DNA of 63,325 nucleotides, the filler included, from Perkinsus chesapeaki ATCC PRA-425 (Eukaryota > Protista > Perkinsozoa), in NCBI GenBank assembly GCA_013115145.1. It is 4 parts of 4 records of this genome, joined end to end, with 100 filler letters (N's around TTAATTAATTAA, not from the genome) between each part and the next. Parts side by side here need not be neighbours in the genome. Positions count along the whole stretch, not along the records: positions 26,699 to 42,628 come from JAAPAO010000717.1; 3 more parts are not named here. One strand, given 5' to 3'. The translations under genes and the position numbers were made by a program. The number at the start of each line of letters is the position of its first letter. Positions within the stretch are counted from its first letter, which is position 1. Shown here piece by piece: positions 26,699 to 42,628 of this stretch. The notes under the pieces are model-generated. The model ran no database searches. It saw nothing but the letters and a program-made list of their open reading frames with translations, and was not told where the DNA came from.

Positions 26699-26957
26699 CA
26701 TGCAATAAGATATAAGAAACTTTTTGATCCCATCCCATTTCCATGTCGAGTTCAACCACTAGACCGCCACGTGCGCATCTTGTAGTTTTTCTGCACAGCG
26801 CATCCTGTGGTTTTTCCACGTGCGTGGGGACAGGTAAAACCCTATCGCTGTTGCATGGTTCTATCTTGTGAACTTGAGTTTCGTGTCTTGATCCACCATC
26901 GCATATTCTCTGGCGATTTTGTTCTTCTATCAGGCACGATTTAATAAGCCAGTTTAC

Positions 26958-28667
26958 ATGAGTCGACGTCGCACACTTTCGTTCTCCGACTCTTCGGTCC
27001 GTAACCGCTGGGTGGACCGTAATGGAGCACAAGCTGCTGTCCAATTGATTCTGGCATCGAAGCACAATGATCCAAAAGCGTGCCCTATCTCATCTATTCC
27101 TAGTGACGTCATTATTGACAATATTCTGCCCTTCATTCACTTCGACCAGCCGGTTAGAAACTGCATCTTCGTATGTGGGGGACGGTCATCCCGCGTAATG
27201 GACTCCAATCGCTACCTAAGCACTGTAGAGGTCTACGATGACTACACGCGTAAGTGGTCTAGAGCACCACCGATGCGCAACAAAAGAGTCGGTGCTGCTG
27301 CGATGGCCGTTGGTGATGAACTCTACGTGGTTGGTGGTTATCGCGCTCATCCCGATCAACCTCTTGGGTGCGTGGAAGTCTATAACCCTTGGCTTAACAG
27401 ATGGAAAAGGCTTCCCTCAGCGATGCAGATACCGCGCTTTGGTCACAGTCTTGCCGTTGTTGGCGATAGATATCTATACGCTATCGGTGGAGACTCTCGT
27501 CGCCAGTTGGTATCAGAAGTAGAGATATTTGACACCCACACTGATGAATGGCTTCAACCTCGCCAAAGCCTATCGCTACCAAGGCCGTTGGCTGGCGGTC
27601 GTGTCATAGAGAAGGATGGCCTACTATACATCGTCGGTGGAGATGTGGGCTCATCTCCCTTACAGTTCTCCGACCTCATCTATGTCTTGGATACAACTAC
27701 TACTCCTCATGCTTGGTCGGTGCTTTCAGTGCGTCTTAGTGTGGGGCGATCAGCGTGCGCAGTTGCGTGGCTGGACGAATCGAAGAGCGCCATTGGCGTG
27801 TTTGGCGGTTATGTGGTGATTGATGGCGACTTCAAAGAGGTGTCAACGAGCGAGGTGGTCTCGTTGGATTCGGCTCACCTGGTCCCCCTAGATGACGCTA
27901 ACTCCCCTGGTCGAGTTATGCCGGCTATCTACAGCAGAAGCATCCCCGAAATGCCATCGACCAGAGCAGGGTGCAGAGCGGTCACTGTTGGTTCCCGTGT
28001 GATTTTGGTGGGAGGGGAGAACCCGGTTGCTACTGACACCTTTGAGGTCGATGACAGTGTCAGCGACTCCGTCTCTAGTCCGGCATCGGAGCGTTCGTCG
28101 TCTGAGCCCCCAGATATCTTGGCCGACCTCATCAACCATGGCGCTACTTCTAATGGTGCAACGGCTAGTATGTTTGCTCAGCTTGTGAATGGCCCTGAAG
28201 ACCAGCGTCCCGACTCCCCTGGTTCCACCACAGGAGACGAATCCTTGCCGCACGGTGCTGCATCGATCGATGAGGCAGTCACCAGAGCGATGCATCGCTA
28301 CTTCACTCTGGTGCACAGTACGAGACCAAACGCTGAGGCGTCCAACAATCGAGAGCGTGAGGCTGCTGCTCGACTGCTGCAAGAGATCACTAGAGCCTTG
28401 CGTATACAGGCTGCCCACGCAAGAAGGCTGACTGAGCCCGTGAGGGTGGTCCACGACAAGCCATTAGTTTTCGACTCGGCCAAATGGCAGTGGGTCGACG
28501 AACAGGCGTTGTTTGCTGGACGCACTGCCGCTGCTATTTCTGTTGGTTCTGCTTTCCCTACAAGCTATGGCTGCTTACCACGACGTTTGAGCAGTCGTAG
28601 TCTGACGCACTGCAGTAAAAGGAGTCGGGTGGAATGCACTCCTAGCAGCTCGGCAAGAAGAAGATAG
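26958..28667 (+). CDS. Intronless Kelch-repeat protein (6 blades) with N-terminal F-box-like motif
   Basis: ATG 26958. ISSIPSDVIIDNILPF followed by six GG-containing Kelch repeats (FVCGG, YVVGG, YAIGG, YIVGG, GVFGG, ILVGG). Confidence 0.9.
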   Translation: MSRRRTLSFSDSSVRNRWVDRNGAQAAVQLILASKHNDPKACPISSIPSDVIIDNILPFIHFDQPVRNCIFVCGGRSSRVMDSNRYLSTVEVYDDYTRKWSRAPPMRNKRVGAAAMAVGDELYVVGGYRAHPDQPLGCVEVYNPWLNRWKRLPSAMQIPRFGHSLAVVGDRYLYAIGGDSRRQLVSEVEIFDTHTDEWLQPRQSLSLPRPLAGGRVIEKDGLLYIVGGDVGSSPLQFSDLIYVLDTTTTPHAWSVLSVRLSVGRSACAVAWLDESKSAIGVFGGYVVIDGDFKEVSTSEVVSLDSAHLVPLDDANSPGRVMPAIYSRSIPEMPSTRAGCRAVTVGSRVILVGGENPVATDTFEVDDSVSDSVSSPASERSSSEPPDILADLINHGATSNGATASMFAQLVNGPEDQRPDSPGSTTGDESLPHGAASIDEAVTRAMHRYFTLVHSTRPNAEASNNREREAAARLLQEITRALRIQAAHARRLTEPVRVVHDKPLVFDSAKWQWVDEQALFAGRTAAAISVGSAFPTSYGCLPRRLSSRSLTHCSKRSRVECTPSSSARRR

Positions 28668-29172
28668 AAGAAGCTGTACGATATTATAATCCGTTAACAG
28701 TTGTCCGTTTGACCACCATATATCGCTGCTGTTTGGGAGGTAGTATTGATACTATCGAGAAGCTCCCCTCGATGAGCTCTTGATGAAGGAAGTGAGCGCC
28801 GTTGTAATGTTGTCGATGACGTTAACCAGAGCGAGTTGTTTAACAATGCTGTAGCAGAGGAACTGGCTGTTCTGCGATAGGCTCAGAGGATTAGTAGTTG
28901 TGCACGTTATATAATTCATTACCCTTCTGCTCGCTGTACGCTTCGACACCATCGCCGTTGTCTCTACCACCTGCATCCGTGGCATCTGGTGGAGGCAAGG
29001 TTTATAAGTGTCTTTGCGTGTTTAGCATTAAGTTGATAATCGGCAGCAACGAGTGACGCAAGCCTCGCTTGTTGCCCTATCAACTGGATGCATGCATGAT
29101 GAGTAGATTAATGCGTTGGGCAGCTGGTTGTTGTGTTAGAGTAAAGGGGGAATGGTGGTGATGTAGTTGGCA

Positions 29173-31790
29173 ATGAGTGCAGCAGCAATACCGTTGGGGA
29201 TGCCTACAATGGCGGAGTGCCCGCTGATGATAGGTAGTGGGGAGGCGGGGGACGATGGTTTCGGGTATCCACAGTCTGATGGTCGCACATGGTGGGCATA
29301 GTGATATTGAGACAGTGAAGGAGCCTAGTACAGATTAATCTCACTGGGGATGTGATAATATCTGTCGATAGTATCGACATACTATACTATGATATACTAT
29401 ACGGTATCGACTCGATACCGTATAGTATATTTGGGCTAGTAGGAGTGAAGTATGAAGCATTGCTGAGTTCATGTCTATGGGCAACTAGGAATACCCTGTA
29501 GAGTCGTAACTATAGTTGCTTAAACACCTATTAATAATGATCTAGTTGAAAGGGTAATGCTTGTACGTAAATCATTGGGTTGTTGCATGGTTGTTCTAAT
29601 ACGCGTCTCATCGTAGGTGTTCGGTTATCCGGCTCCGAGGTGGTGCATGAGATCGTTAAACCCGGAGCAACTCTGCCCATCAAAGATAAGCTGGTGAGGT
29701 TGACAACGGCACATGATGGGCAGTCAGCGGCATTGGTGGAGATTGTTGTTAGTGGTGGCAGAACAGCTGCTGGGTACTGGAGGGGGGCGAGGGTGCTGCT
29801 TGATGGAAGAGCGCTACTTAAGCACCACCGTACTTGACTGTGTTGATGTATAATAGGTTGTTCTCGCACTTGAACTTTATGAAATACTTCTTATGTCACC
29901 AAGCCACGAAATTTTCCGGTGCTGAGAGGGATCAATGAGACCCACTCTATCGTGCCATGACGTTTGAGGAGCCCTTCTACTCCTGTGCACTCCTTGTCAT
30001 ATCTCAGCGCCTGTCGAACCCTGCTCGTTCTGGATCGCCAGCTCGACACTTCAACAAGCCACTTTCAAGGCTTAGTCCAGTTAGACTTACATTTGAACGT
30101 GACGGTGTACGGTGAGGTTGCGGCTACACTGGACGAGCTGACGGACTTCAGAGGTACCGCAGATCCCGCGGTATCAGCAGTGACCCTTTCGACGGTAGAA
30201 CCGGAACCCCCGGCAACCGTTGGTCGAACCCTGCTGCTCGACACCCCCAACTTGCCTAGCTCGCTCAATGACGGCACTCGAGGGGTTCGTCTTTTCGTAG
30301 AGGGTGTTGGTCGCCACTTGCCCGGCCTTCTGCCGTGGCGTATCGTCAGCCTTCCTGGTGGTTTGAAATTGAGATTAAGGTAATAAAGATCCTGTTTTGG
30401 ACCTCGACTGTATGGCCTTAGACAGGAATCGGTCGAAAGTAGTTTCAAGTCCGTTGAGACGGACAAGACTGGCTGTGCAGTTTGGGAGTGTGGGGTGATC
30501 CTTGCTTACTGTCTTTGCCAAGCGGTCCTCCTACAAGGGCAGCAGTGCGCCCTAGAGGCAAGTGCTGGGGGATCTGTTGAGCGTTAGTATTTCTTTGCCG
30601 CGTCGCTGAAGCCGCGAAACTCTACCGGAAGTTTTCTGAGTTCCTTCATCATCATGGTATTCACAATTTTTCATGTTCTCCGCCATTCGTTGCTGAAATG
30701 AAGTGCTTTTGTTCACCTGTGCCCCTGCAACGCTTTCAAGTTTTACTGCTCCTGGACGGTTCCATTTCAGCTACCGCCGGTCGGCTCTGATTCCTACGGT
30801 GTTGAGCTTGGCTGCGGTACAGGTCTGGTCTCCCTCGCACTGGCTCATATGGGTGTGAAAATGGTCGTAACAGATGGCAATGAAAAGGTGAGAATCTCAC
30901 TCACTTAAGTCTCTCAAGGCTGGCACCTTCGCCGCCGGGATCGAGGGGAAAGACCGATCGCTGGGAATACTAGTTGCCGCCTATTTTCAGTGTTTGTTTT
31001 ACACTACGCGTTTTCTTGCTCCGCGGAATTTAGACCGCCAGAAACGAGTGTCATTACGGCGTCGTTTCCAGGTCATACAGTTAGCAGAGAGGAACATGCG
31101 AGAGAATCCTGGCATTCCCACAGATCGTTTGAGTTTTCGCAAGCTTATGTGGGGCAGTCGAGAGGACTCTGAGGCGTTATTCTACTCAGAGGGCGGAAGA
31201 CATCCTTCGATTGTTGTTGGTAGGTTGAGGAAAGAGGCTTACTGAATCCAATCCGAAGCTGCTTTCCGCACTGGTCCTTAAATTGATCCTGGATTTCACA
31301 GTGGCTGCTTTAAAACCCAGGAGCGTGTGCGTACTGAAATAGGCCATGACGGGAAGTAGGCGTATTATGAAGCAGCCAAGGTGGTGCTCGGGTCTTAGTT
31401 GTCGTAGAAAACGAAATGCCCGTTTCTTGCTAGCTCAAGAACTTTCCAATGGCAGGTAGCGATCTAGTCTACCCTCAATCGCCAGCTGATCCGCTCCTGG
31501 CAGCACTCGACCAACTAGCTGGGGACAACAGCGATAGTAACAGACGCTCATATCGTGTTAGCTTTGATGATGTTTGCTCAGGGACGCGTGTGATCATCTG
31601 CCTCAAGGAGAGAACACGAGACTCGTCCGATTTCATTAGCAAGGCGAAGAAGTGTGGATGGTCGGTGGAAGATCTCGGTCAGACTGATCGACGCCTTCTA
31701 CACCCAGATTTCATCGATGCCATTACTCAGCAACATCTGTTCTCTCTCGTGTGTTTGCGAAGCTGTGTTCGGTCTGAAATTTCACAGTGA
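29173..31790 (+). CDS. METTL21/EFM-family (family 16) protein-lysine methyltransferase with an N-terminal Hsp70 substrate-binding-domain-like module
   Basis: Exons 29173-29233, 29617-29773, 30008-30379, 30422-~30557 (donor uncertain, possibly GC), 30771-30887, 31072-31219, 31456-31536, 31582-31790. MTase motifs TGCAVWECGVILA, VELGCGTG, VVTDGN and GSDLVY. N-terminal ECPLMIG...TLPIK...TTAHDGQSA resembles Hsp70 SBD-beta. Confidence 0.82.
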
Positions 31791-32769
31791 AATGCTTCTA
31801 CTATAACGGCGCTGTGTTACAGTAGCACATATCTCAGTATTGTGCAAATTGTCTCCTTCTAGACTATTATGATCGGTCCTCCTACTGTATTGTATTGCTT
31901 TCCCTTCGCTGTCGATTTGTTGCAAAAAAGCGCGCAGATGCGATGTAGAGAGTTAGTGTCATTCTAGCAACCTAAACCTTCATGGCTTCTTTTACCACTC
32001 TTCTCGGGCCATCGGGGTGGTCACTTACTCTTTATCATCGTCTTGCCGCTCAGCTATGCTGTTTATGACACTGTAGTGTATGTATGCAGCTACATAGTTT
32101 ACACGCAGCATTTCCTTATCGGTCCACGGTGCCAATCATGCAGCTCTATTCTCATGCAGTGCTTCAGTGTGTAACTGTTCTGAACCACCTTACCTTATCT
32201 TGAGGATACGTAGCTTATCTGACTTACGAGCGTGATTCGAGTCCAACACCGGACTTCACTTTAATCGAAGTGGCTGCATTCTTTGCAGATCTTCCCTTTA
32301 TCATTTATAATGCTGTCCCTTAGTAATATCACCAAGTCAAGCTTGTCACTATCGACGGTTGCAACTAGACTCAAGCGAGTGGCTGTACTTCGACGACAGC
32401 AGTTCATCCTTAGACCATGTCTTTAATCATATATAGGTACACATTCGTGATGACTTCATTCGGGAGTCGACTAATCCATCGATTCGGAACTCTCGTGAGC
32501 TGTGTAAGCCGTTCCTCCTCGTTCAGCGTTTTCAAGGCTTGTATTCTCTCTTCCGCTCATCACAATATTTGGAATATTGGGTTTTTCTATTAAATTTTAA
32601 AAATATCGAATATTATATTTCCGCTTCAGAAAATTTAATTTGCGAAAATCAACCAGTTTTCCGCTGCTTTTTTTCGTTCGACTCCTCCGTCTAACCAAGC
32701 TGCCAAGTTGACCCTCTGCTACAACTACTATTTCTTTCAGCTTGGCTCCCTGAACTCGATACCTTTCCG

Positions 32770-34252
32770 ATGGAGTACTTACTGGCGAGTCGATCTCGTC
32801 CGGAGCAGCTTCTCCCGTATAGGGAGGTTAACATACCGAGTGGACCAACTTTCAAATTGAAGTACTCCACGGGGTAGTCGATGACTAAAGTTCCATCGAG
32901 ACTAATAACTGTAAGGCATTCCCTCGTACTTGTGCTTTTTTCGTATCTGTTTGATGGTTAACTTTTCTCTCTATCAGACAGGCAGCAATGTGGAGCTCCT
33001 TCGCTGGTTCACGATGTGACCACACCGGTCGCGGACTCTGGACCGCGTCGATTGTTCTGTCTCGTTATTTGTGGCGGACAAACTTCCTGGAGAATACGAA
33101 AGTAAGTTGCCGTTGATCTGTCCGCAAAAAATATCAGTCTAGAGGCTGAATTACTATAACCGTTGGAGGGATTTAATCAGCAACCTTTTACCGTGCTCGA
33201 GCGACAAACAAACTCTTCCGGGGAACTGGTATACTACCGAACTAATGATGACTATACATTAGGCCGAATCGCCAGCAGCGACTTTAAGCCGCTAGCCATG
33301 GCGAATACAACTCGAGGTAATCACTGAAGTAAAACTACACCGGTCAGCTTATCCCTGCGTTTCGCATATATACAAGAATCAACACCTGATTCGTTAGAGT
33401 CCATCAAACTAAAGGGGTTATAAAGTGCATGTAGCTAACGCTCCAGGAGTTCTTCTCACCACAGTCGCATATGCTAGATAGATGACATCCCAGTGAAAAA
33501 GAGCCATCCTTCTATCCGGTCTCAGGGTCCCATTCTGGACTTGGGTTGTGGTACTGGACTACTAACAATGGTTGCGGCTGAATGGGCTGTTCAGAATGGT
33601 AAACTCAACGACCGGCAACTGCTGCAAGTCATTGGAATCGATTGCAACGATGAGGTATCTTCCCTAACCGCTATCGGTAACCTTACGTACATGGATGCAA
33701 ATCAGACTGTCGAGCTAGCTCGAGAAAATGCTGTGGCTAACGGGTATGCAAATAGACTGACGAGCGGCAGTATGGAGCTCCGAACGGTCGACTGGTCAGA
33801 TGCGAAGAGCCTGCAAGAGCTCAGAAATATCATTGGGAAACCTGGACTCATTCTCGGTAAGCCACAATGAGTGTGAGTATTGCTATGTCTAGTTCATCTG
33901 GACTCCTCTGTATTGCAGCAAATATTCACCCTCTTAGGTAGCGATATAATTTATCCTGGACCGGAGTCCCCCATTCAGCCGCTACTCGCAGCGCTTGACT
34001 TACTGGCCAACGAGGACACCAGTAGGGAAGGAACTGCTGCCAGTCTTTAGCTTGGTTCATCTCACAGGTATCTTGTTGTCATTCCGTGAGCGGTCTCGAA
34101 TAGTTGCCCATTTTGTGGAAGAGGCGGAGCAAGCTGGATGGAAAGTTAAACCATTGAGCCAGAATGATTTTGAAATTGATGTTCCTGTTGACGTATCGAG
34201 TCCTGTGCTATTCGATTATCGAGACTTCCGCCTTCTAAGGCTCTCGAAGTGA
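32770..34252 (+). CDS. METTL21/EFM-family protein-lysine methyltransferase, tandem paralog lacking the Hsp70-like module
   Basis: Exon 32770-32861, then from 32978: KQAAMWSSFAGSRCDHTGRGLWTASIVLSRYL; ILDLGCGTGL; VIGIDCN; VDW; GSDIIYPG...LLAALD; stop 34252. Intron positions are shared with the upstream copy. Confidence 0.85.
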
Positions 34253-35229
34253 TCTATACAACCGATGCGTTGTGTTTGTCAAGTGGAGTGGCTAACGGCT
34301 CTATAGATTATACTGGCCAATCAACGTTCCCTAGCAAACACATTATCACTACCGCGTTATCCTCTGATAGTTGTGCGGCACCCAGGCGCACTTGCACTGC
34401 AACGGTAGCAATTTGTTGATGTCGAAATGCATTCTTAGCAGCTTTCAACACTTCACAAGTCGCTCACTGTTCAGAACCCGAACACTTCGCAGTGTCCGTT
34501 CCCACACTACGTAAGCAACCTTCTGGTGAAACTACTCTCTTATTTCGTATGGTATGTTATAGTGACTCATTAGGACCTTCACTAAATATTGCTAAGACCT
34601 CTAAACCAGTGAAATCAGTGTGGTCCAAACGCGAAGCTTTCGACTTGCTTACTCCTGGCATGTCAGGAACTCTGGTAGACCATCGCCACATTCGCGAGAA
34701 GTGGATAAGCTCATCGCATCAGCAATAGACGGAGTGGGCTCGTTAGTTAACGAGACCCTCCTTCTTGGCAAAGTAGAACAATACGACCAAACTAAGCCCT
34801 CCGGTTCATCTTCAGGTTGTCTCCCAAATTGCAGGGCAAGAAGTTCGAACGAATGCTCAGGCACTCGAGGAGTCCATCCAAAAAGTGCTAACGCGGACGA
34901 GGCTCCCAGAACCTTCAGGTTGAGCCGTGCTTGAGATGTGTTGATTTTCAGAAAGTAGAAGATTATTTGAACTCCTCTCAAGCGGTCGAACAACTTGGTA
35001 CGTATAGGCTTTTTAGAAAGCATGGTTGTTGATTTGTGCTACTGATGGATATTTCCTTTTTGATCTCACCATAGTTACTGTTTCAGGTGAGGAACGTGTG
35101 AAACTTATTAAGGAACAACTAAATGCTAGTGGGGAGGTTTTGAGGGGAGTCATTACTTTCTTGTCCACAACCTCTGAGAGTAGGGCGGGGTAGAATTATC
35201 TTAGCGCATCCTCCCCATCTACAGGCTCG

Positions 35230-36340
35230 TTGGAATCGTCGATAGCAGTGCTGAACAAGTCACTAAGTCTCATGGAGATCCCGATTGCGATCCTTGGGCC
35301 ACAGGCGAAGCGAGATAGCGAAGTACACGAGTGGTGGCGGTCGGGAAGTCATTCACCCAGTCACTTAGGTGCAAGAGAGAATCCTTTCTGGTCTGAGCTC
35401 CCGGGCCGGAAGCAACTCGGTACGCATCTTTCGACGGGATTGAAGCTCGCCAACTACTCTCAGATTTCGAACCAGTCTGATCCACGGAGATTGATACAGT
35501 TCATTCGGCATGTATCTCGGCAGAGGCAGGAACGTCTGTCGGAGTATGTAGATGCTCTCTTGGCCAGCGGGCAATTGACGGTAAAGCTGATATTACTCTT
35601 AAAGGATATGATTCTAATATTCAGAAACATCCTCTTGTACCTCACGAGTTCGAGAAGAAGCTTTATCTTGACATACTCAGTATCGTAACTTTTGCTTTTG
35701 AGAATGGCATGGGAAGCCTTGACAACCTACAGCTGTGGGGGCACGCCGTTAAAGTGATGATGGAGGTTGCTGAATAATGGCTTCACGCATCGCTCAGGTT
35801 CGTTCGCTACAAGCTTCAGAGCCTTTCATGAATCTGACGATCGGCGGGTCATCGATGCATGGAAGGGAACAGCTCGGAGTTATCGGTGAGCATCTCTCAT
35901 TCTTGATTAGCCCGCGCCGAATTGCTTTTTCTGCAGTTGACTCCATGCTAAGTGACGAGTTTGTGAACAATCCTTTGATACCTGACGCTGTTGAGCGAAG
36001 CCTTTATCTCAACACTGTTATTCTCATATTTCGGTAACAGTCTGACGTGAGTCGAAAAAGCTATTGCTGCCAATTCAGGATAATCGAGGACCTATCACAC
36101 TCTTTGCATGTCACCTTCATGGGCCATCGTTTGGAGTGGAAGTTGAGTAGGTCGCCGTTGAGGGCAACTTACCTCTAGGCTCTCGGTCCTCTCCAGCTCC
36201 TTTGGATATCGCACAAGTTCGTTGCCAAAAAGCACCTGCACATATTAAGTTGAATGAAGAAGTCATTGATCGCCTCGTTAAGGAGCTGCTTTCCGATTCT
36301 AGCATCAACGTATTTTGGATCCCGGATATCATTGGTGAGC
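35230..36340 (+). CDS. Hypothetical multi-exon protein with two internal 'LLSD..(V/I)N...IPD' repeats; boundaries uncertain
   Basis: VDSMLSDEFVNNPLIPDAVERSLY (about 35937) and VKELLSDSSINVFWIPDII (about 36280). Confidence 0.45.
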
Positions 36341-36813
36341 CGTCCCGGGCTTATAGTTCAAAAAAAACTTATTTAAAACTGTACTTTATACAGCAGTACT
36401 GTTCGAAGCATGTGCTCCAACAGCACTGCTTAATGTATTGTGAAATGTGACGGGTAAAAAAGCCGAGTACGTGGGATCATAGGTTGCGGTTCGCACAAAA
36501 AACAAGGTTTAGAATGGTGGAAATCTTACTGTTGTGATTGCTTATCTCAAGTGTTGCCAATAAAACGAAGGAAGGTTGTCCCCTGGTAACAAGTAACGCA
36601 GAAACCAGTGATAGGGAGGATGATAGTATCGTGAGATTGAATGTAAATGAATGCATCGGCTAACAAGTACCAAATGCTCATATCAGAATTGTTTATGGAG
36701 GGGCACGACACCCCTTAGCAAGAATACTAGAGCACCTCTGAGCACCAGTAAACTGCAGGATAGTTGAACAAGCCGGAGTCGGCTTGTCGCTTCGGCATCT
36801 GTTAAAGACTTGT

Positions 36814-37457
36814 CTAAGGCTTCAAGTTAGTCGTAGACATGCAGTCTCGCGTCCAGTGGATGGTGCAGATCGTGTGTCCCGTGCAGTATGTGCTGAAAAT
36901 CTCGCACCCGAGCATACATTTGCCACCACGACAATACGGCACGGAGTCTCCCTCTGGGGGATCCGGGCATTCGGTTTCATTGTGACAACTCACAGTGCAG
37001 ATGCATCCATCAATGAGCCAGAAGAAGCCCTGAAATAACACATATTATTATTTGCTAGGGCACTACAGTTGTTGTAGTACAACATGTAGTCGACTATATG
37101 CTCACCTCACAGAGTAATCTTTGGCCGGCAGGACACCTACATTTGCTCCTGTCCGGCGACCAACCCAAGCATTCGCCTCTGGGAATGGCGTAAGCGCCTG
37201 AAGTGCAGGGTTGGGATGACTAGGATTCATAGCAATATGATGACTATATAACGTGAATCATCTATAAATTATAGACTATAATATTGGATACAAATGCTGG
37301 GCACCTTACTTCGATTCTTGCCTTCTGCTTCGGATCTGAGTATTATAGTTATAGAGGAGCAGTCTATACCCTACCTCTGCTCATCCAGTGTACTGGTTAG
37401 ATTGGTGCTCCAGAGGATTGTGACCCATATCAGGGCTAACGGGGCTATGTGGCGCAT
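36814..37457 (-). CDS. Secreted cysteine-rich protein, paralog A (4 exons)
   Basis: Signal-peptide exon MRHIAPLALIWVTILWS..., 26-nt microexon, exon AYAIPRGECLGWSPDRSKCRCPAGQRLLCE, and last exon GFFWLIDGCICTVSC...YCRGGKCMLGC...HWTRDC. Confidence 0.8.
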
Positions 37458-39905
37458 TATACGTTAGCTGGAGTTAGCCTCTAGTAAGTTTTCTGAAGCG
37501 GGTTAAACCTCCCTCTCGCCTTGTCACATAGCATGCGCATGCGTGCTCACGTGGTCTCCCGCTAATGTTGCGGCAGGGTCTTCGCAAGGCCACACCATAG
37601 TTGCACACCCGGGCCAGACTGCTCGTAGATCCTAAAAGAAAGCAGACAACCTCCCTCGTCTGTGGACGGCGCATCCACATAAGGACGGTATTGATCTTTC
37701 TATCCACAAATGGCCACCGGAGGGCTTGGCGATGTCACGCTTCACAGACCAGCCTGCCCATCCTACCAGATCAATGACCGGAAAATACTGCCTCGTAGAC
37801 CGACCTGGAAATTCCGATTTGGGCCCCAAATTTCGGGGTTATTCTGGTAATGTATGTGGTTCACGTAACCGTGTGCTGGAAGGGTAGACCGTTGCACTGT
37901 ATGCACGAGTGTCGCAAGTTGTGTATTCAAACGTGACGTAGGTGGCTGATCAAGTCACGCGAGCTGTTGCAAGTCAGGTAGAGCACATGAACTTGGTGTC
38001 ATCAAGTTGAACCGGCTCCCTGACAGAATTATCGTATACATTAACCGTCAGCGCTCTAATATTGTGCTCAGTAGAGGAGTGTGTATTGTGTCGTAGAGTG
38101 CGCTTAGAGTATCAATTGCATACTGCGATCTCTACCTATTTACCCTTCATTAACCATGCATCATTATCACAGGGCCCTTGGGCACGACACTACTCATTAT
38201 TATTACAAACTAATTGTTTTTTATCAACGCTTATTTCCCCCAGAATCAGCAATCTATCGCAACGTGCTTCGTCTCATGCTGCGAGTGGTTGAAGAGCTGC
38301 TTGGCAGGTGGGAGGTTTATGAGAAATAATTTCTTTTTGGCACTATCTCTGTGATTACCCTCAGAGTAGAGCTAGACCTTCTCGGTACTGCATTTTCATT
38401 GAAACTGGTGAACATGAGGGACTCCTCCTTGTGGAGCTTCCAGGCCGAGCTCGAAGGGTATGCCGGGGAAGCAGAAGGCTTTCTTGTTGAAGCTTTGCTC
38501 AGTGATTACTACAAGTCCCTTGCGCAAGTACCCACCAAGGAGCTCCAGGAACGCCTTTACGAGCTGCAAAATGAACATGAGATGATCGGCCGGGTATTCT
38601 CTACTGATGCAGCTCCTTCCTCCGCATACCGGGCTGAGCTTCAGTCACTAAACTGACGCACTGCTCGGCTTCCGAGCCGTCTTAGGTTTTGGGCGCCAGA
38701 TCAGATGTCACGAAAGTTGAGATCCCCCCAGGTAATGGGAACGTGGAAGGCTGTGACCTGAGGAAAGTTGAATATGGTGAGTCATACTTTTGGCGAACAA
38801 TGCTACTACGTATGGCTAGGGAAAGGCAAGTTCGCTGTGAGAGCAGCTGAGCATCCTCATGTAGCAAGGTGCCTTCAAGTGAAGGGTACGTCTTGTCAGT
38901 CATCAATCAATTAGCCTTGCAGCCTCCGCTCCTCTTCAGGTTTGGCGCCAGCTAATATCCAGACATGTTACCATATTATCGCGGATTTTAACAGCTACCC
39001 ACAGTGGATGCCATGGTGCACGTCTGTAATGGAGACATCAGCGTCTCTCTGCTGAGTATGTTATCTACCCCAGGCCAGAGTAGATGGTTCCGCAAAGACA
39101 TCACCTCTCCAGTTCCAATGCGCTGTAGGGTTTGGAATAAAGCATGGCGGCCCAACAATCAGTGATGTTGTTACGTAAGAATGCTCCTTTATCATACTGC
39201 AATTTTTCCTGTCCAATTATCATACCCGAAGCGCGAAGTGTCGTGTGCTTCAAGAGCAGTGCTTTCGGAACACGATCGTGCTGTCAGGTACAACGTCACG
39301 CTTAAGCCACCTGATGGAAAGGCAGCTGGCATCGTGAGGCCTTGTCCACTGTTAGGTTCTATCGTTATACCTGTTGCTTAGGTTGCAGCTTCGGAGCCAT
39401 TCAGCTACTGCGAGACACTGGTTTACGATTGGACCTTTGAAGCTAAGGAAAAGTCAACTCAAGTAACAGTAAATGTCTATTTCAAAGCCAAGTAAGAATG
39501 AGGAATCGAACGTATTCGGGCTTCCTGGCTGTATTCAAAGTAGCTCTTAGTCGGTTCTTTAACTTTAATCATTGATTCATACTATACTGTGTGCTTTTGA
39601 TCAGAACGTTCTTGTTGCTACCTATCTGGGAAGCACTGCAACGGAGTTTGATTGAAGGCATAATGGACGCTTTCGCAGAAGAAATTGTATCCCACGAAAG
39701 GGGGGCATCTCACAGTTCAGAAGAAACGGAAGAATATTCTTCAGAGTCGCAGCAGGGACCTCACCGCTGAATCTCGCCTTCAGGAAGCACTGCGTCCCAG
39801 GCACAACTTCTCATTAACAAAAGCGTATATATACCTTGCGTTTTGCAGTGGTTATGACGTCTCCATCACACGAATAAGGCCGCGAGTTCGATCCTTGGTC
39901 ATTCA

Positions 39906-39923
39906 CCCCCCCCCCCCCCCCCC
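39906..39923. repeat. C18 homopolymer (G18 on the - strand)
   Basis: Direct count in the sequence. Confidence 0.95.
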
Positions 39924-40175
39924 GATTAAGTCCAAAAATAACCCAAGATCCCTTCAAGTATTAAAGAATAAGATTATGTGAGATTGAATGTGAAAGAGTC
40001 CCGTATACTCAGAGCCTGTAGTTAATAGGGGGTTAAGACCTCCTTCTAAGTGAAAAGGTCGGAGTACCGTTTACCAGAAGTGAAGTTGAGAACTAGAAGC
40101 CCGAGTGGACTTTTAGCTATTAAGCTACTCTTAGGAGTCATAACGTTACCCACGTTAACGACTTACTTGAGGCTA

Positions 40176-40810
40176 CTAGTCAGACGCAGACAGGCAGTCC
40201 CAAGTCCAGTGGAACCGGCACTCCATGTCCTTCGGGCATTTTTCGCCCTTGGAGCACCCGAGCATACAGAAACCACCACGGCAGTAAGGATTGGAGTTTG
40301 CCTCCGGATGATTCGGACAGTCTGACTCTTCCTTACAGGGCTGAGTGCAGATGCATCCGTCAGCATACCCAAACCAGCCCTGAAACAGAATATATCACTA
40401 GGGCGCTAGCACTCAAGTTGGCTATAGCTGAACAGTGCCCACAGGTTTACCAAGCAGTCCAATATTTGACCGGGCTCACACGTGCACTTCTGCCTGTCCG
40501 GATGCCAACGTATGCATTCGCCTCTGGGAATACCGTAATCGCCTGAAATATTACACTTCAAGTGTAGAACTAGGAGTAAATATCTATCGGAACGCTAAGA
40601 TCTCGGTGGGTAAGTAATCCATGTTGGCGAACTCAAATGGTGAGTATCTTACTTGAAGTGCTGTTTGTTCTTTCGTATCTGAGTAATGTCCAGTATCATA
40701 GTTATACAGTAGCAATTCGCGCCTTACCCTTGCTCATCCAGTATATCACTGCTTTTGGTACCAACAACCATAGCGAGCAACATCAGAGTGAACGATATTG
40801 TATGACGCAT
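40176..40810 (-). CDS. Secreted cysteine-rich protein, paralog B (4 exons)
   Basis: Exon 40810-40728 MRHTISFTLMLLAMVVG..., 26-nt microexon 40678-40653, exon DYGIPRGECIRWHPDRQKCTCEPGQILDCL, and last exon GWFGYADGCIC...YCRGGFCMLGC...HWTWDC, TAG 40176. Confidence 0.82.
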
Positions 40811-40959
40811 CACGTTCAAGCCGAAGGGTCGCAATGAGTCTTCGAGAATCGGCACCAGAGTTGTGACCCCGCTTTGTGACATGACATGAGCATGCGTACT
40901 CATGTACCGTTAGTCATGGTTGCACTTCTGCTTCTGCTACAGGGCAGTATCAAAAGCTT

Positions 40960-41230
40960 CGATTCAAAGCCCTGTAGTACATCCTTGTGTTGAAGAACAG
41001 CAGACATTAGTCGAGCGAACCATAATGAGCACAGACGCCTCTGGTCTTTGTTGGACGCATCTGTGAAGCCTTCACTATTTGCCGATTCTCAACTCGACAT
41101 CGGCGGGCGTCGTCACGCCTGGCGACAGGGCGGCCTTACAGTAGGTCTCTGTGCCCGTCCGTCCAATGAAGGGTAAGTCACTGTCACCCATATCAGGAAA
41201 GTTGACATGCAAAACGGGAATCGCGGGTTG
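40960..41230 (-). mobile_element. Possible decayed Ty3/gypsy RT remnant
   Basis: Stop-interrupted frame ...VELRIGKIVKAS...YGSLD*CLLFFNTRMYYRALN is weakly reminiscent of the gypsy 'DGS.R.C.DYRALN' motif. Confidence 0.25.
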
Positions 41231-42628
41231 GCAGGTGAATCCGTATGTTCAATGCTCCACAACTGTTCATCCTTTGGTAGCGACTCTATATCGCTTGTGC
41301 TCGAGTCGCTGGTAACCAGGGTAAGGAGGCTGTCTAACCACTACTGATCATGGAGGCTCGCGATTCAAAGGAGCGCTGCTAGGAACGTCTTTCAATGTCT
41401 ATGAACACCCTGAAGCTCTATGCTGTATGCCGGCACCGTGACGGCGTGTCGCAACGCAGCCGCTGCGTTAGTGACGCCGCATGATGCCGCCTAACAGGGA
41501 TTTCTCATAATGAGAATCATTCTCATTATGAGAAATCGCTGTAATCATCATGATTACGGACTATGTAAGAGGTAATGCGATCGCTGTCCCCTACTTCACA
41601 GGCAAGTAAGTCATGGAGGAACGAGCCGATCATGTGTCATCGTGCGACAATGTCACACCGATGTCATCAATCGCGCCCCATGAATGGTGGTCCATTTATG
41701 GAGCAAGGTCAATGACGCGGACAAAGAGTTGTGCAACGGGGACAACTCTCCAGAGTCGTCAAGAGCGCTCGCCCGGTAGCTAGAGGGTGGCCGGCACGAA
41801 GAGAGCCGAGTGGTAGCCGGGGTGAGGCCTACGAGGTGAAACACTCGTAGCCTTAGATGTTCGTCAGTTTCACCCCACCCGCCCAACCCGATAAGAGGTA
41901 TGGGGGCCTTGGCTGTGATAGCGTAGGACTAACATCGGATTGCTGTCATTAGCGAAGGCGTCTACGGGAAATCCTCAGTTGTGGCCCGGATTGTAGATCA
42001 CGGGACCAACTGTAACAAGCAGGGTAAGACCGCTTGTTGCTTGATTTCTCCTAGACAACCACCCAAACCGCTATACCTCTGCACAACCCGTGAGACAAGG
42101 AAGTGAATTATTTTTCAGGTAATTACCGCGCCTCCTCGAGTCGATGACTGCCGTGTGCTGGAGCAGCGACATGCCAATAGAGTTGACAACAAGTTGTAAC
42201 CATGTTAAATTTTGGATTGCTCGATGATAATCATTTTGAGATGTTGATTGAGGGGGTTTCCTACTTCCTGCAATACTCTCGTAGACCTCAAGTCGCAATC
42301 ATCGTGACTAGTCCAACCATCTTATCGAAATGCTACTCGATGGATTTGCCAGATATGAGCCAGCGACTGCGTAGTCGGTGGATAAGCTCAAACCAAAACT
42401 CTGCAGTTGTGAGTCGTAAATCTCGAGAGTTGGCTGTGTTACGCTAATGATAAACCCGAATCAGGTTCGTCGAGCCCCAATCGATCTCTTAGTATCGCCC
42501 TCACTGGTTCGGTGAGGTATCAGGGGACACAGAGGTTCTGGATCCACCCACTGATAACAGAACACCAAAGGCTAGCTGTTCGACGGTATATTAGCTAGCA
42601 TAGGTTAGTGATATATTACACCTGTCAC

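What the first reader, a model, noticed from the sequence alone, without database searches (positions are those of the whole stretch)
29173..31790. Fusion of an isolated Hsp70 substrate-binding-domain-like module to a METTL21-type lysine methyltransferase
Phase-consistent splicing gives MSAAAIPLGMPTMAECPLMIG-VRLSGSEVVHEIVKPGATLPIKDKLVRLTTAHDGQSAALVEIVVSGGRTAAG-ACRTLLVLDRQL...GLVQLDLHLNVTVYGEV. By eye this tracks DnaK/Hsp70 SBD-beta (PLSLGIE...TTIPTK...STAEDNQSAV...GMPQIEVTFDIDADG) from its first strand, with no ATPase domain or lid. It then runs in frame through a linker into a family-16 MTase. The linker-MTase junction (phase-2 intron 30380-30421, AG|ACAG acceptor) is reproduced exactly in the neighbouring paralog, which supports the frame. 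METTL21A is known to trimethylate Hsp70, so the enzyme may have captured a piece of its own substrate class. It could serve as a peptide-binding targeting domain, a cis substrate or decoy, or a co-chaperone docking site (inference). I know of no described protein with this architecture.
Basis: partly seen in the sequence, partly recalled or inferred. Interest (0 to 1): 0.85.

Follow-up and report, generated by a model that had tools for sequence, protein, structure and literature searches.

The report
Hsp70-like module on a lysine methyltransferase
A Perkinsus gene joins a short, very diverged copy of the peptide-binding part of the chaperone Hsp70 to a METTL21-type protein lysine methyltransferase; I found no earlier description of this combination, it is conserved among Perkinsus species, and there is still no RNA or 3D-structure evidence for it.

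Summary
On the + strand, 29173-31790 is one intron-bearing gene (gene A). It has GT-AG introns in consistent phase. Its ATG is the one the genome's own annotation uses. There is no other in-frame ATG before methyltransferase motif I.

The three N-terminal exons are conserved at protein level in a second Perkinsus lineage (pN 0.22, pS about 0.78, saturated). Introns differ in length.

The C-terminal part is a family-16 (METTL21-like) lysine methyltransferase. Its closest solved relative is METTL21D, not METTL21A.

An HMM of the Hsp70 SBD-beta, built from 161 DnaK sequences, matches the spliced N-terminus at 21.6 bits (14.3 for the ortholog). None of 5000 shuffles reached this. The match falls only on the SBD-beta part of full-length DnaK.

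That support comes from the first half (strands 1-4). The second half is collinear but not significant alone. Library scans of the contiguous pieces stay sub-threshold: Pfam gives nothing and NCBIfam gives HscA at E 0.13.

No RNA run holds the locus. The spliced module could not be folded because it has no reference.

Function as a lidless peptide-docking domain is inference. The idea that the enzyme captured its own substrate is not supported.

The parts
29173..29233 (+). Gene A exon 1: start codon plus 20 codons. Its end (CPLMIG) aligns with the start of Hsp70 SBD-beta strand 1.
   Evidence: An in-frame TAG lies 6 nt upstream. The donor is GTAGTG. The peptide is conserved in L003, also with its own ATG and an upstream in-frame stop. 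The genome's own annotation starts here.
29617..29773 (+). Gene A exon 2: the Hsp70 SBD-beta-like core, equivalent to DnaK ~401-448 (strands 1-4).
   Evidence: Residues 1-73 score 17.4 bits against the DnaK SBD-beta HMM, with 0 of 3000 shuffles reaching that. Among 659 real stop-free stretches this ORF is the top hit. In the Atlas, 48 of 100 feature hits are HSP70. The only NCBIfam hit is HscA, positions 401-448, E 0.13. Against L003, pN is 0.25 and pS 0.70.
30008..30153 (+). Gene A exon 3a: collinear with SBD-beta strands 5-7 (GLVQLDLHLNV against GMPQIEVTFDI).
   Evidence: It adds about 4 bits to the joint alignment, in the right register. Alone it scores 0.4 bits, P about 0.05. It is conserved in L001, L002 and L003. 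The Atlas finds nothing for it.
30154..30198 (+). Candidate 45-nt in-frame mini-intron (GTACCG...GGTAG).
   Evidence: P. olseni and L003 have real, stop-containing introns exactly after ELTDFR. Splicing here gives DFR-EPEPPATVGR, which matches DFR-EPKPPATVGR without a gap.
30199..30379 (+). Gene A exon 3b: a conserved proline-rich linker with the motif PATVGR(T/S)LLL, then the N-terminal hairpin of the methyltransferase.
   Evidence: Conserved in three lineages. Residues 97-111 of the P0004 AlphaFold model form a confident hairpin.
30380..30421 (+). 42-nt phase-2 intron at the junction into the methyltransferase core.
   Evidence: It holds two in-frame stops, so it must be spliced. The same position, phase and AG|ACAG acceptor occur in gene B at 32862-32977.
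30422..30575 (+). Methyltransferase exon with the conserved Trp motif (AVWECG). It may end at 30557 if the GC donor is used.
   Evidence: W is invariant in alignment A2. Comparison with orthologs favours a boundary after ALE.
30771..30887 (+). Methyltransferase exon with AdoMet motif I (VELGCGTGLVS).
   Evidence: Pfam Methyltransf_16 scores 20.4 bits on this 39-aa piece alone.
31072..31219 (+). Methyltransferase exon (motif II region).
   Evidence: Conserved in L001-L003 by tblastn.
31456..31790 (+). Last methyltransferase exon(s): Post II motif GSDLVYPQ, and the stop codon at 31788-31790. 31537-31581 is a second candidate 45-nt in-frame mini-intron.
   Evidence: The mini-intron sits where P. 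olseni has an intron, and removing it closes a 16-residue gap.
32310..34252 (+). Gene B: a tandem family-16 paralog with its own ATG and its own short N-terminal exons. It has no Hsp70-like module.
   Evidence: The N-terminal peptide ML(S/C)(L/I)SNI... after the ATG is conserved between the window and L003. Intron positions are shared with gene A. The SBD HMM gives no hit there.
26958..28667 (+). Upstream kelch-repeat gene, a separate gene.
   Evidence: P0033 (569 aa) is this window's own annotated protein. The P. marinus ortholog P0034 is also stand-alone.
29047..29107 (+). Conserved non-coding block about 70-125 nt upstream of the gene A ATG.
   Evidence: 25 consecutive identical bases, and about 85% identity over 60 nt with L003:1-61, even though synonymous sites are saturated.

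Best explanation
Gene A (29173-31790, + strand) encodes one protein of about 411-447 aa, so far seen only in Perkinsus.

Shown. Residues ~16-120 are a strongly diverged derivative of the Hsp70 substrate-binding beta-sandwich (SBD-beta). The first half (strands 1-4, which carry the two cleft-forming loops) is statistically recognisable. The second half is collinear. The protein has no ATPase domain, no interdomain linker and no helical lid. A conserved proline-rich linker with a Leu-rich motif, PATVGR(T/S)LLL, joins the module to a seven-beta-strand, family-16 (METTL21-like) protein lysine methyltransferase. The fusion, the family-16 membership and purifying selection on both parts are all shown.

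Inferred. The module acts as a lidless, ATP-independent docking domain. It would hold an extended hydrophobic segment of a client, or of the enzyme's own linker, and so bring the substrate to the methyltransferase or gate access to it. Other family-16 enzymes use N-terminal accessory regions for substrate choice in a comparable way.
For: Gene model
- All junctions are GT-AG and in phase.
- Exons 2 and 3 contain no Met. The first in-frame Met after residue 19 lies beyond motif I, so the constrained methyltransferase exons can only be translated from the exon 1 ATG.
- The genome's own annotation and the P. olseni models join these exons.
- Three lineages share the exons, intron positions and phases.

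Selection
- In the module pN is 0.22 and pS 0.78. In the methyltransferase exons pN is 0.13-0.26.

Hsp70 homology
- SBD-beta HMM from 161 DnaK: 21.6 bits for the window protein and 14.3 bits for the L003 ortholog. HMMER's per-sequence P is about 1e-8. None of 5000 shuffles reached these scores (maxima 11.8 and 12.6).
- A full-length DnaK HMM places the module only at nodes 400-487.
- 25 of 88 aligned positions are identical to E. coli DnaK. These include P396, L397, G405, P419, K421, T428, A429, D431, Q433, S434, A435, G443, R445, G468 and Q471.
- Controls: the reversed sequence scores 4.0 bits, 152 real proteins reach at most 3.1 bits, and among 659 real ORF stretches the top two are the exon 2 ORFs of the two species.
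- hhalign gives P 3e-4.
- In the Atlas, 48 of 100 feature hits for exon 2 are HSP70.
- The only NCBIfam hit is HscA, at the SBD-beta positions.

Methyltransferase
- Pfam Methyltransf_16 scores 65 bits on the orthologs.
- The best PDB match is METTL21D, E 2.5e-11.
- Foldseek's top hits are METTL21D, METTL21A, FAM86A, METTL21C, CaM-KMT and METTL21B.
Against: - No RNA evidence: no listed run holds the locus.
- Unbiased scans of the contiguous pieces do not reach significance for Hsp70. Pfam gives nothing. PDB searches with phmmer and a 2-sequence profile give nothing. NCBIfam gives E 0.13. hhalign probability is only 16-39%.
- The second half alone is not significant and the Atlas does not recognise it.
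- AlphaFold on the only referable pieces gave low confidence for the module parts: pLDDT 47 for exon 2 and below 50 for P0004 residues 1-89. The fold is therefore unverified.
- The arch residue Met404 of DnaK is Ser here and Leu in L003.
- The gene pair is absent from the syntenic P. marinus locus.
- Function is pure inference.
Confidence: 0.5

Rival explanations
1. The homology is real but the module is a relic. A fragment of an Hsp70 gene was captured after the tandem duplication. It now serves only as a structural N-terminal extension or oligomerisation surface. Alternatively it binds the enzyme's own Leu-rich linker as a pseudo-substrate (autoinhibition) and recruits no clients.
For: Only the first half keeps recognisable Hsp70 signatures. 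The arch Met404 is not kept. The linker motif PATVGR(T/S)LLL is conserved in three lineages. From my own knowledge, that motif resembles a classic DnaK-binding core, Leu-rich with a flanking Arg. Paralog gene B works without any such module.
Against: Purifying selection on the module is as strong as on the catalytic domain. The positions lining the hydrophobic pocket stay hydrophobic: I401 is V, F426 is L, V436 is A and I438 is V.
Confidence: 0.25
2. The resemblance to Hsp70 is convergent or due to chance. The N-terminus would then be a lineage-specific beta-rich extension with no Hsp70 ancestry.
For: Pfam gives no hit and PDB gives no Hsp70 hit with the contiguous pieces. hhalign probability is below 40%. 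The second half is not significant. No fold evidence exists. The family is shallow, with three close lineages only.
Against: The directed HMM test gives P about 1e-8, with 0 of 5000 shuffles, and works in both species. The match falls only on the SBD-beta of full-length DnaK and loop lengths are preserved. Real-sequence and reversed-sequence controls score at most 4.4 bits. Two independent unbiased tools, the Atlas and NCBIfam, point to Hsp70-family proteins and NCBIfam to the same positions.
Confidence: 0.18
3. Gene-model artefact. The Hsp70-like exons would belong to a separate small transcript, or to none, and the methyltransferase would be expressed without them.
For: No transcript data. 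The genome's own annotation is clearly over-merged: 1259 aa spanning genes A, B and more. Reading through the donor after exon 3a in the relatives would end a small module-only protein.
Against: No in-frame ATG exists between residue 19 and motif I, yet the methyltransferase exons are under purifying selection. In the window, the second half of the module and the start of the methyltransferase lie in one open frame, 30008-30379. Phases are conserved in three lineages.
Confidence: 0.07

Closest known systems
METTL21D / VCP-KMT and the METTL21 subgroup of methyltransferase family 16 (Pfam PF10294)
   Same: It is a seven-beta-strand lysine methyltransferase core with motif I ELGCGTG, the conserved Trp (VWE) and the Post II motif SDLVY. 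It gives the best sequence match in the PDB (E 2.5e-11) and the best Foldseek matches.
   Different: Identity is only 26-28%, so orthology to any human member is not established. The human enzymes are about 200-230 aa and carry no N-terminal chaperone-like domain. The substrate here is unknown.
METTL21A / HSPA-KMT
   Same: It belongs to the same family and is known to bind and methylate Hsp70 proteins (PMC10238732). This makes a link between a family-16 enzyme and Hsp70 parts thematically plausible.
   Different: Its sequence match is weaker than METTL21D's (3.8e-6). Its target, Lys-561, lies in the helical lid (my own knowledge), and the lid is absent from this module. The module therefore cannot be the equivalent substrate.
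Hsp70 substrate-binding domain beta-sandwich (DnaK residues ~393-502; HscA)
   Same: The alignment to DnaK 395-482 is collinear, with 28% identity. The signatures P-L-x-(L/I)-G, (I/L)-P-x-K, T-A-x-D-x-Q-S-A and G-x-R are kept, and loop lengths are preserved.
   Different: There is no nucleotide-binding domain, no interdomain linker and no lid. The second half is very diverged and strand 8 is uncertain. The arch Met404 is replaced. The fold is not verified.
FAM86A / eEF2-KMT and Efm2 (family-16 enzymes with N-terminal accessory regions)
   Same: In both, a family-16 core is preceded by an extra N-terminal region that influences substrate recognition or activity (PMC5324768 abstract; FAM86A is among the top fold matches).
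   Different: Their N-terminal regions are unrelated to Hsp70.

Membership tests
Methyltransferase family 16 (PF10294, METTL21-like 7BS lysine methyltransferases) | Pfam Methyltransf_16 match above the gathering score | tested here: met
   The orthologs P0004 and P0001 score 65 bits against a cut-off of 21. P0004 is about 64% identical to gene A over 343 columns. The window's 39-aa motif I exon alone scores 20.4 bits.
Methyltransferase family 16 (PF10294, METTL21-like 7BS lysine methyltransferases) | AdoMet motif I, the conserved Trp before it, and the Post II (D/E)xx(Y/F) motif | tested here: met
   VELGCGTGLVS, AVWECG and GSDLVYPQ are present in the spliced protein. W, ELGCG and D-L-x-Y are invariant in the 29-sequence alignment A2. 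The role of Post II is taken from PMC10238732.
Methyltransferase family 16 (PF10294, METTL21-like 7BS lysine methyltransferases) | Seven-beta-strand fold closest to solved family-16 members | tested here: met
   In the AlphaFold model of ortholog P0004 the core has pLDDT about 75-94. Foldseek's top 16 hits are all METTL21D, METTL21A, FAM86A, METTL21C, CaM-KMT or METTL21B.
Methyltransferase family 16 (PF10294, METTL21-like 7BS lysine methyltransferases) | Lysine methylation of a defined protein substrate | not testable with these tools
   Needs biochemistry.
METTL21A (HSPA-KMT) orthologs | Closest relative among family-16 members is METTL21A | tested here: not met
   METTL21D scores E 2.5e-11 and METTL21A 3.8e-6. 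No phylogeny was made.
Hsp70 substrate-binding domain, beta subdomain | Significant match to an Hsp70 profile, confined to the SBD-beta region | tested here: met
   In the directed test on the spliced module the scores are 21.6 and 14.3 bits, and 0 of 5000 shuffles reach them. The full-length DnaK HMM aligns only nodes 400-487.
Hsp70 substrate-binding domain, beta subdomain | Recognition by unbiased library-wide searches (Pfam HSP70, PDB, NCBIfam) | tested here: inconclusive
   Only contiguous exon pieces could be submitted. Pfam gave nothing and PDB gave no Hsp70 hit. NCBIfam's sole hit was HscA at E 0.13, at the right positions. In the Atlas, 48 of 100 feature hits were HSP70 for exon 2 and there were none for exon 3a.
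Hsp70 substrate-binding domain, beta subdomain | Eight-stranded beta-sandwich fold | tested here: inconclusive
   The spliced module has no reference and could not be folded. The pieces gave low-confidence models.
Hsp70 substrate-binding domain, beta subdomain | Hydrophobic peptide-binding cleft (DnaK I401, M404, F426, A429, V436, I438) | tested here: inconclusive
   The aligned residues are V22, S25, L49, A52, A59 and V61. The pocket stays hydrophobic and A429 is kept in the window protein, but the arch Met is lost. Binding was not tested.
Hsp70 chaperones (full-length) | N-terminal actin-like ATPase domain, interdomain linker and helical lid | tested here: not met
   The protein starts 15 residues before strand 1. 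After the module come a proline-rich linker and the methyltransferase. It is therefore a domain relative, not an Hsp70.

The most novel reading that the evidence does not exclude
A free-standing, lidless and ATPase-less Hsp70 SBD-beta has been recruited as the built-in client-recognition domain of a lysine methyltransferase. Methylation would then be directed at proteins that expose Hsp70-type hydrophobic segments. Alternatively, the enzyme would be gated by its own conserved GR(T/S)LLL pseudo-substrate until a client displaces it. Either way this would be a genetic 'Rosetta-stone' link between family-16 methyltransferases and chaperone-type client recognition.
Probability: 0.2. Interest if true: 0.75.

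Novelty: new variant of a known kind. Interest (0 to 1): 0.55.

Why it matters
Family-16 lysine methyltransferases are known to associate with and methylate chaperones such as Hsp70 and VCP. How they choose substrates is poorly understood.

A natural fusion of such an enzyme to a piece of the Hsp70 peptide-binding domain would be the first case, as far as the searches here show, of an isolated SBD-beta reused as an accessory domain of another enzyme.

It would give a simple system for two questions. Can a lidless SBD-beta target an enzyme to its clients? Do these methyltransferases and chaperone-type recognition work together?

The case is restricted to Perkinsus, a mollusc parasite. Its general importance depends on experimental confirmation.

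Tried and rejected
- RNA evidence. No RNA run holds the stretch. The two small runs with the same species label laid nothing.
- PDB searches with exon 2, exon 3 and a 2-sequence exon 2 profile gave no Hsp70 hit.
- Pfam on the pieces gave no HSP70 hit.
- The Atlas gave nothing for exon 3 or exon 3a.
- The exhaustive representative search with the 123-aa exon 3 found only one Perkinsus relative and no Hsp70.
- The word-index search with the exon 2 ORF found nothing.
- I tried to reach a stored full-length protein so the spliced module could be scanned and folded. The genome's own model is 1259 aa, outside every length window I could query. The spliced module therefore has no reference, and I left out Pfam, HHpred-like and AlphaFold runs on it rather than type it.
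- AlphaFold on exon 2 alone and on P0004 gave low confidence for the module parts.
- Kelch-methyltransferase fusion, suggested by the NCBI name 'kelch-like' on the P. olseni fragments, is rejected. The kelch gene is annotated separately in this genome and in P. marinus. In both species an in-frame stop precedes the exon 1 ATG. An acceptor AG between that stop and the ATG cannot be fully excluded.
- The syntenic P. marinus locus has no gene A or gene B within 10 kb.
- The intron-identity figures (global alignment of introns of unequal length) and its 'exon7b' row (wrong frame) are not meaningful and were not used.
Full report
**Source and context.**
The piece 26699-42628 is identical to NCBI contig JAAPAO010000717.1 of assembly GCA_013115145.1. 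Its closest named relatives in the tool outputs are Perkinsus olseni and P. marinus proteins. From memory, and unverified, I believe the assembly is P. chesapeaki. The DNA is eukaryotic, about 48% GC, and has many short introns.

**Gene model.**
- Four further exons (30422-30575, 30771-30887, 31072-31219, 31456-31790) continue the frame to a stop codon. This gives 447 aa.
- Exons 2 and 3 are long open stretches without any Met.
- After Met19, the next in-frame Met lies behind the AdoMet motif I. The methyltransferase exons can therefore only be translated from the exon 1 ATG.
- An in-frame TAG sits 6 nt upstream of that ATG.
- The genome's own annotation starts a model at exactly this ATG. That model then wrongly runs on through the tandem paralog and beyond, to 1259 aa.

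**Comparative evidence.**
- An exhaustive HMMER search of 1.84 billion representatives with exon 3 found a single relative, a P. olseni fragment.
- Its contig and that of a second fragment begin inside exon 3.
- A Logan contig from another run (L003) carries the whole locus. It has an ATG exon ending in ...ECPLMIG, an exon 2 that is 65% identical, and an exon 3a that is 67% identical.
- The intron positions and phases are the same as in the window. The intron lengths are quite different.
- Between the window and L003, synonymous sites are saturated (pS 0.70-0.82). In the module pN is 0.22, the same range as in the methyltransferase exons, 0.13-0.26.
- The module is therefore coding and constrained.

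- P. olseni and L003 both have a real, stop-containing intron right after ELTDFR, and the exon resumes at EPKPPATVGR.
- At that place the window has a 45-nt in-frame GT...AG stretch (30154-30198) followed by EPEPPATVGR.
- A second 45-nt in-frame GT...AG stretch (31537-31581) lies where P. olseni has another intron.
- A GC donor at 30558 matches the orthologous boundary.
- With these three changes the protein is 411 aa and aligns to the P. olseni model without the 15-, 6- and 16-residue gaps.
- Introns of 42-50 nt are demonstrably used in this locus: 30380-30421 here, and 50 and 46 nt in L003.
- The domain architecture is not affected.

**The methyltransferase.**
- The orthologs score 65 bits on Pfam Methyltransf_16, against a cut-off of 21.
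- Motif I, the conserved Trp and the Post II D-x-x-Y are present.
- The nearest solved sequences are METTL21D (2.5e-11), a plant relative, and METTL21A (3.8e-6).
- An AlphaFold model of the ortholog has a confident core. Its Foldseek neighbours are exclusively family-16 enzymes.
- It is a family-16 member. Orthology to METTL21A is not indicated.

**Is the N-terminus Hsp70-like? The directed test.**
- I fetched E. coli dnaK and 160 DnaK loci from viral and GTDB contigs.
- I built an HMM of the columns for DnaK 386-510 and scored the spliced N-terminal 121-130 residues, assembled from window.fa and L003 in the sandbox.
- The window protein scores 21.6 bits. HMMER's i-E-value is 1.2e-4 for 10,002 sequences, which is P about 1e-8. 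The L003 ortholog scores 14.3 bits.
- No shuffle out of 5000 per protein reached these scores; the maxima were 11.8 and 12.6.
- A full-length DnaK HMM aligns the module only to nodes 400-487.
- Controls: the reversed sequence scores 4.0 bits. The best of 152 real proteins, many of them beta-propellers, scores 3.1 bits. Among 659 real stop-free stretches of Perkinsus DNA, the two best are the exon 2 ORFs of the two species, and the next scores 4.4 bits.
- 25 of 88 aligned positions are identical to E. coli DnaK. They include the signatures PL-x-(L/I)G, (I/L)P-x-K, TA-x-D-x-QSA and G-x-R. There are only one- or two-residue indels.

**Is the N-terminus Hsp70-like? Unbiased tools and limits.**
- The Atlas gave HSP70 for 48 of 100 feature hits with exon 2.
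- NCBIfam's only hit among 18,950 models was HscA at positions 401-448, but at E 0.13.
- The signal comes from residues 1-73 (17.4 bits). Exon 3a alone is not significant (0.4 bits, P about 0.05). In register it adds about 4 bits.
- Pfam and PDB searches with the contiguous pieces found no Hsp70.
- hhalign gives P of 3e-4 to 1.6e-3, with probabilities of 16-39%.
- The Atlas does not recognise exon 3a.
- The spliced module has no reference, so it could not be given to Pfam, the PDB search or AlphaFold. The two referable pieces folded with low confidence.
- I put true Hsp70 SBD-beta ancestry at about 0.7-0.75, and a complete eight-stranded sandwich at about 0.5.

**What is absent.**
- There is no ATPase domain: the protein starts 15 residues before strand 1.
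- There is no hydrophobic interdomain linker and no helical lid.
- After the module comes a conserved EP-x-PPATVGR(T/S)LLL segment, then a variable stretch, then the N-terminal hairpin of the methyltransferase.
- The Leu-rich segment could be strand 8 of the sandwich or a cis-binding pseudo-substrate. This is speculation.

**Mechanism (inference).**
From established knowledge of Hsp70, the beta subdomain binds extended hydrophobic heptapeptides between loops L1,2 and L3,4, and lidless constructs still bind but exchange quickly. The positions lining the pocket stay hydrophobic here (V22, L49, A59, V61). A429 is kept in the window protein (Ser in L003), and the arch Met404 is lost. The most likely role is an ATP-independent docking domain that selects or presents substrates to the methyltransferase. 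METTL21A methylates Lys-561 (PMC10238732), which lies in the lid, and the lid is missing here.

**Distribution and novelty.**
- The tandem paralog (gene B) shares intron positions with gene A but has a different, short N-terminus with its own conserved ATG.
- The nearest non-Perkinsus methyltransferase relatives, diatom-like environmental proteins, show no SBD signal.
- The P. marinus syntenic locus lacks both genes.
- Literature searches found no such architecture.
- I classify it as a new variant of a known kind: a family-16 methyltransferase with an unprecedented accessory domain. It is of moderate interest until transcripts and a fold are in hand.

Noticed in passing
window 29173-42628 (L166:2475 onward): The genome's own annotation merges gene A, the tandem paralog gene B and further downstream exons (a weak Polyketide_cyc hit) into one 1259-aa model. 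Gene A has its own stop at 31788-31790. Gene B has its own ATG at 32310, followed by a peptide conserved in L003. The merge therefore looks like an over-prediction.
   Followed up: partly
window 30154-30198 and 31537-31581; also 30380-30421: There are two 45-nt, in-frame, stop-free GT...AG stretches exactly where relatives have longer introns, next to a proven 42-nt intron. Such in-frame mini-introns cannot be detected from the open reading frame alone and may inflate protein models in this genome.
   Followed up: partly
window 30558 (GCAAGT) and L003:1099 (GCAAAA): GC-AG introns are likely. L003 needs a GC donor at the junction into the methyltransferase core. The window has a consensus GCAAGT at the orthologous boundary of the next intron.
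   Followed up: no
window 29047-29107 and L003:1-61: A non-coding block upstream of the gene A start codon (CAACGAGTGACGCAAGCCTCGCTTG...) is almost identical between two lineages whose synonymous sites are saturated. It may be a promoter, 5'UTR or trans-splicing-related element.
   Followed up: no
window 29392-29430 (inside intron 1): A perfect palindrome with 19-nt arms and a 1-nt spacer (ATATACTATACGGTATCGA / TCGATACCGTATAGTATAT) accounts for part of the larger size of intron 1 compared with L003.
   Followed up: no
L165:11721-20701 (P. marinus GG674978.1): Downstream of the orthologous kelch gene, P. marinus has no gene A or gene B within 10 kb. Instead it has a 1965-aa integrase-bearing retroelement-like gene. 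The methyltransferase pair is either lost or moved there, or it was gained in the other lineage.
   Followed up: partly
P0001, P0004 (P. olseni KAF4705583.1 and relative): These methyltransferase fragments are named 'kelch-like, partial' in NCBI although they contain no kelch repeat. The name probably came from a merged model with the upstream kelch gene.
   Followed up: partly
window 32310-32384: Gene B starts with a Ser/Leu/Lys/Arg-rich peptide (MLSLSNITKSSLSLSTVATRLKRVA) that looks like an organelle-targeting presequence. No targeting prediction was run.
   Followed up: no
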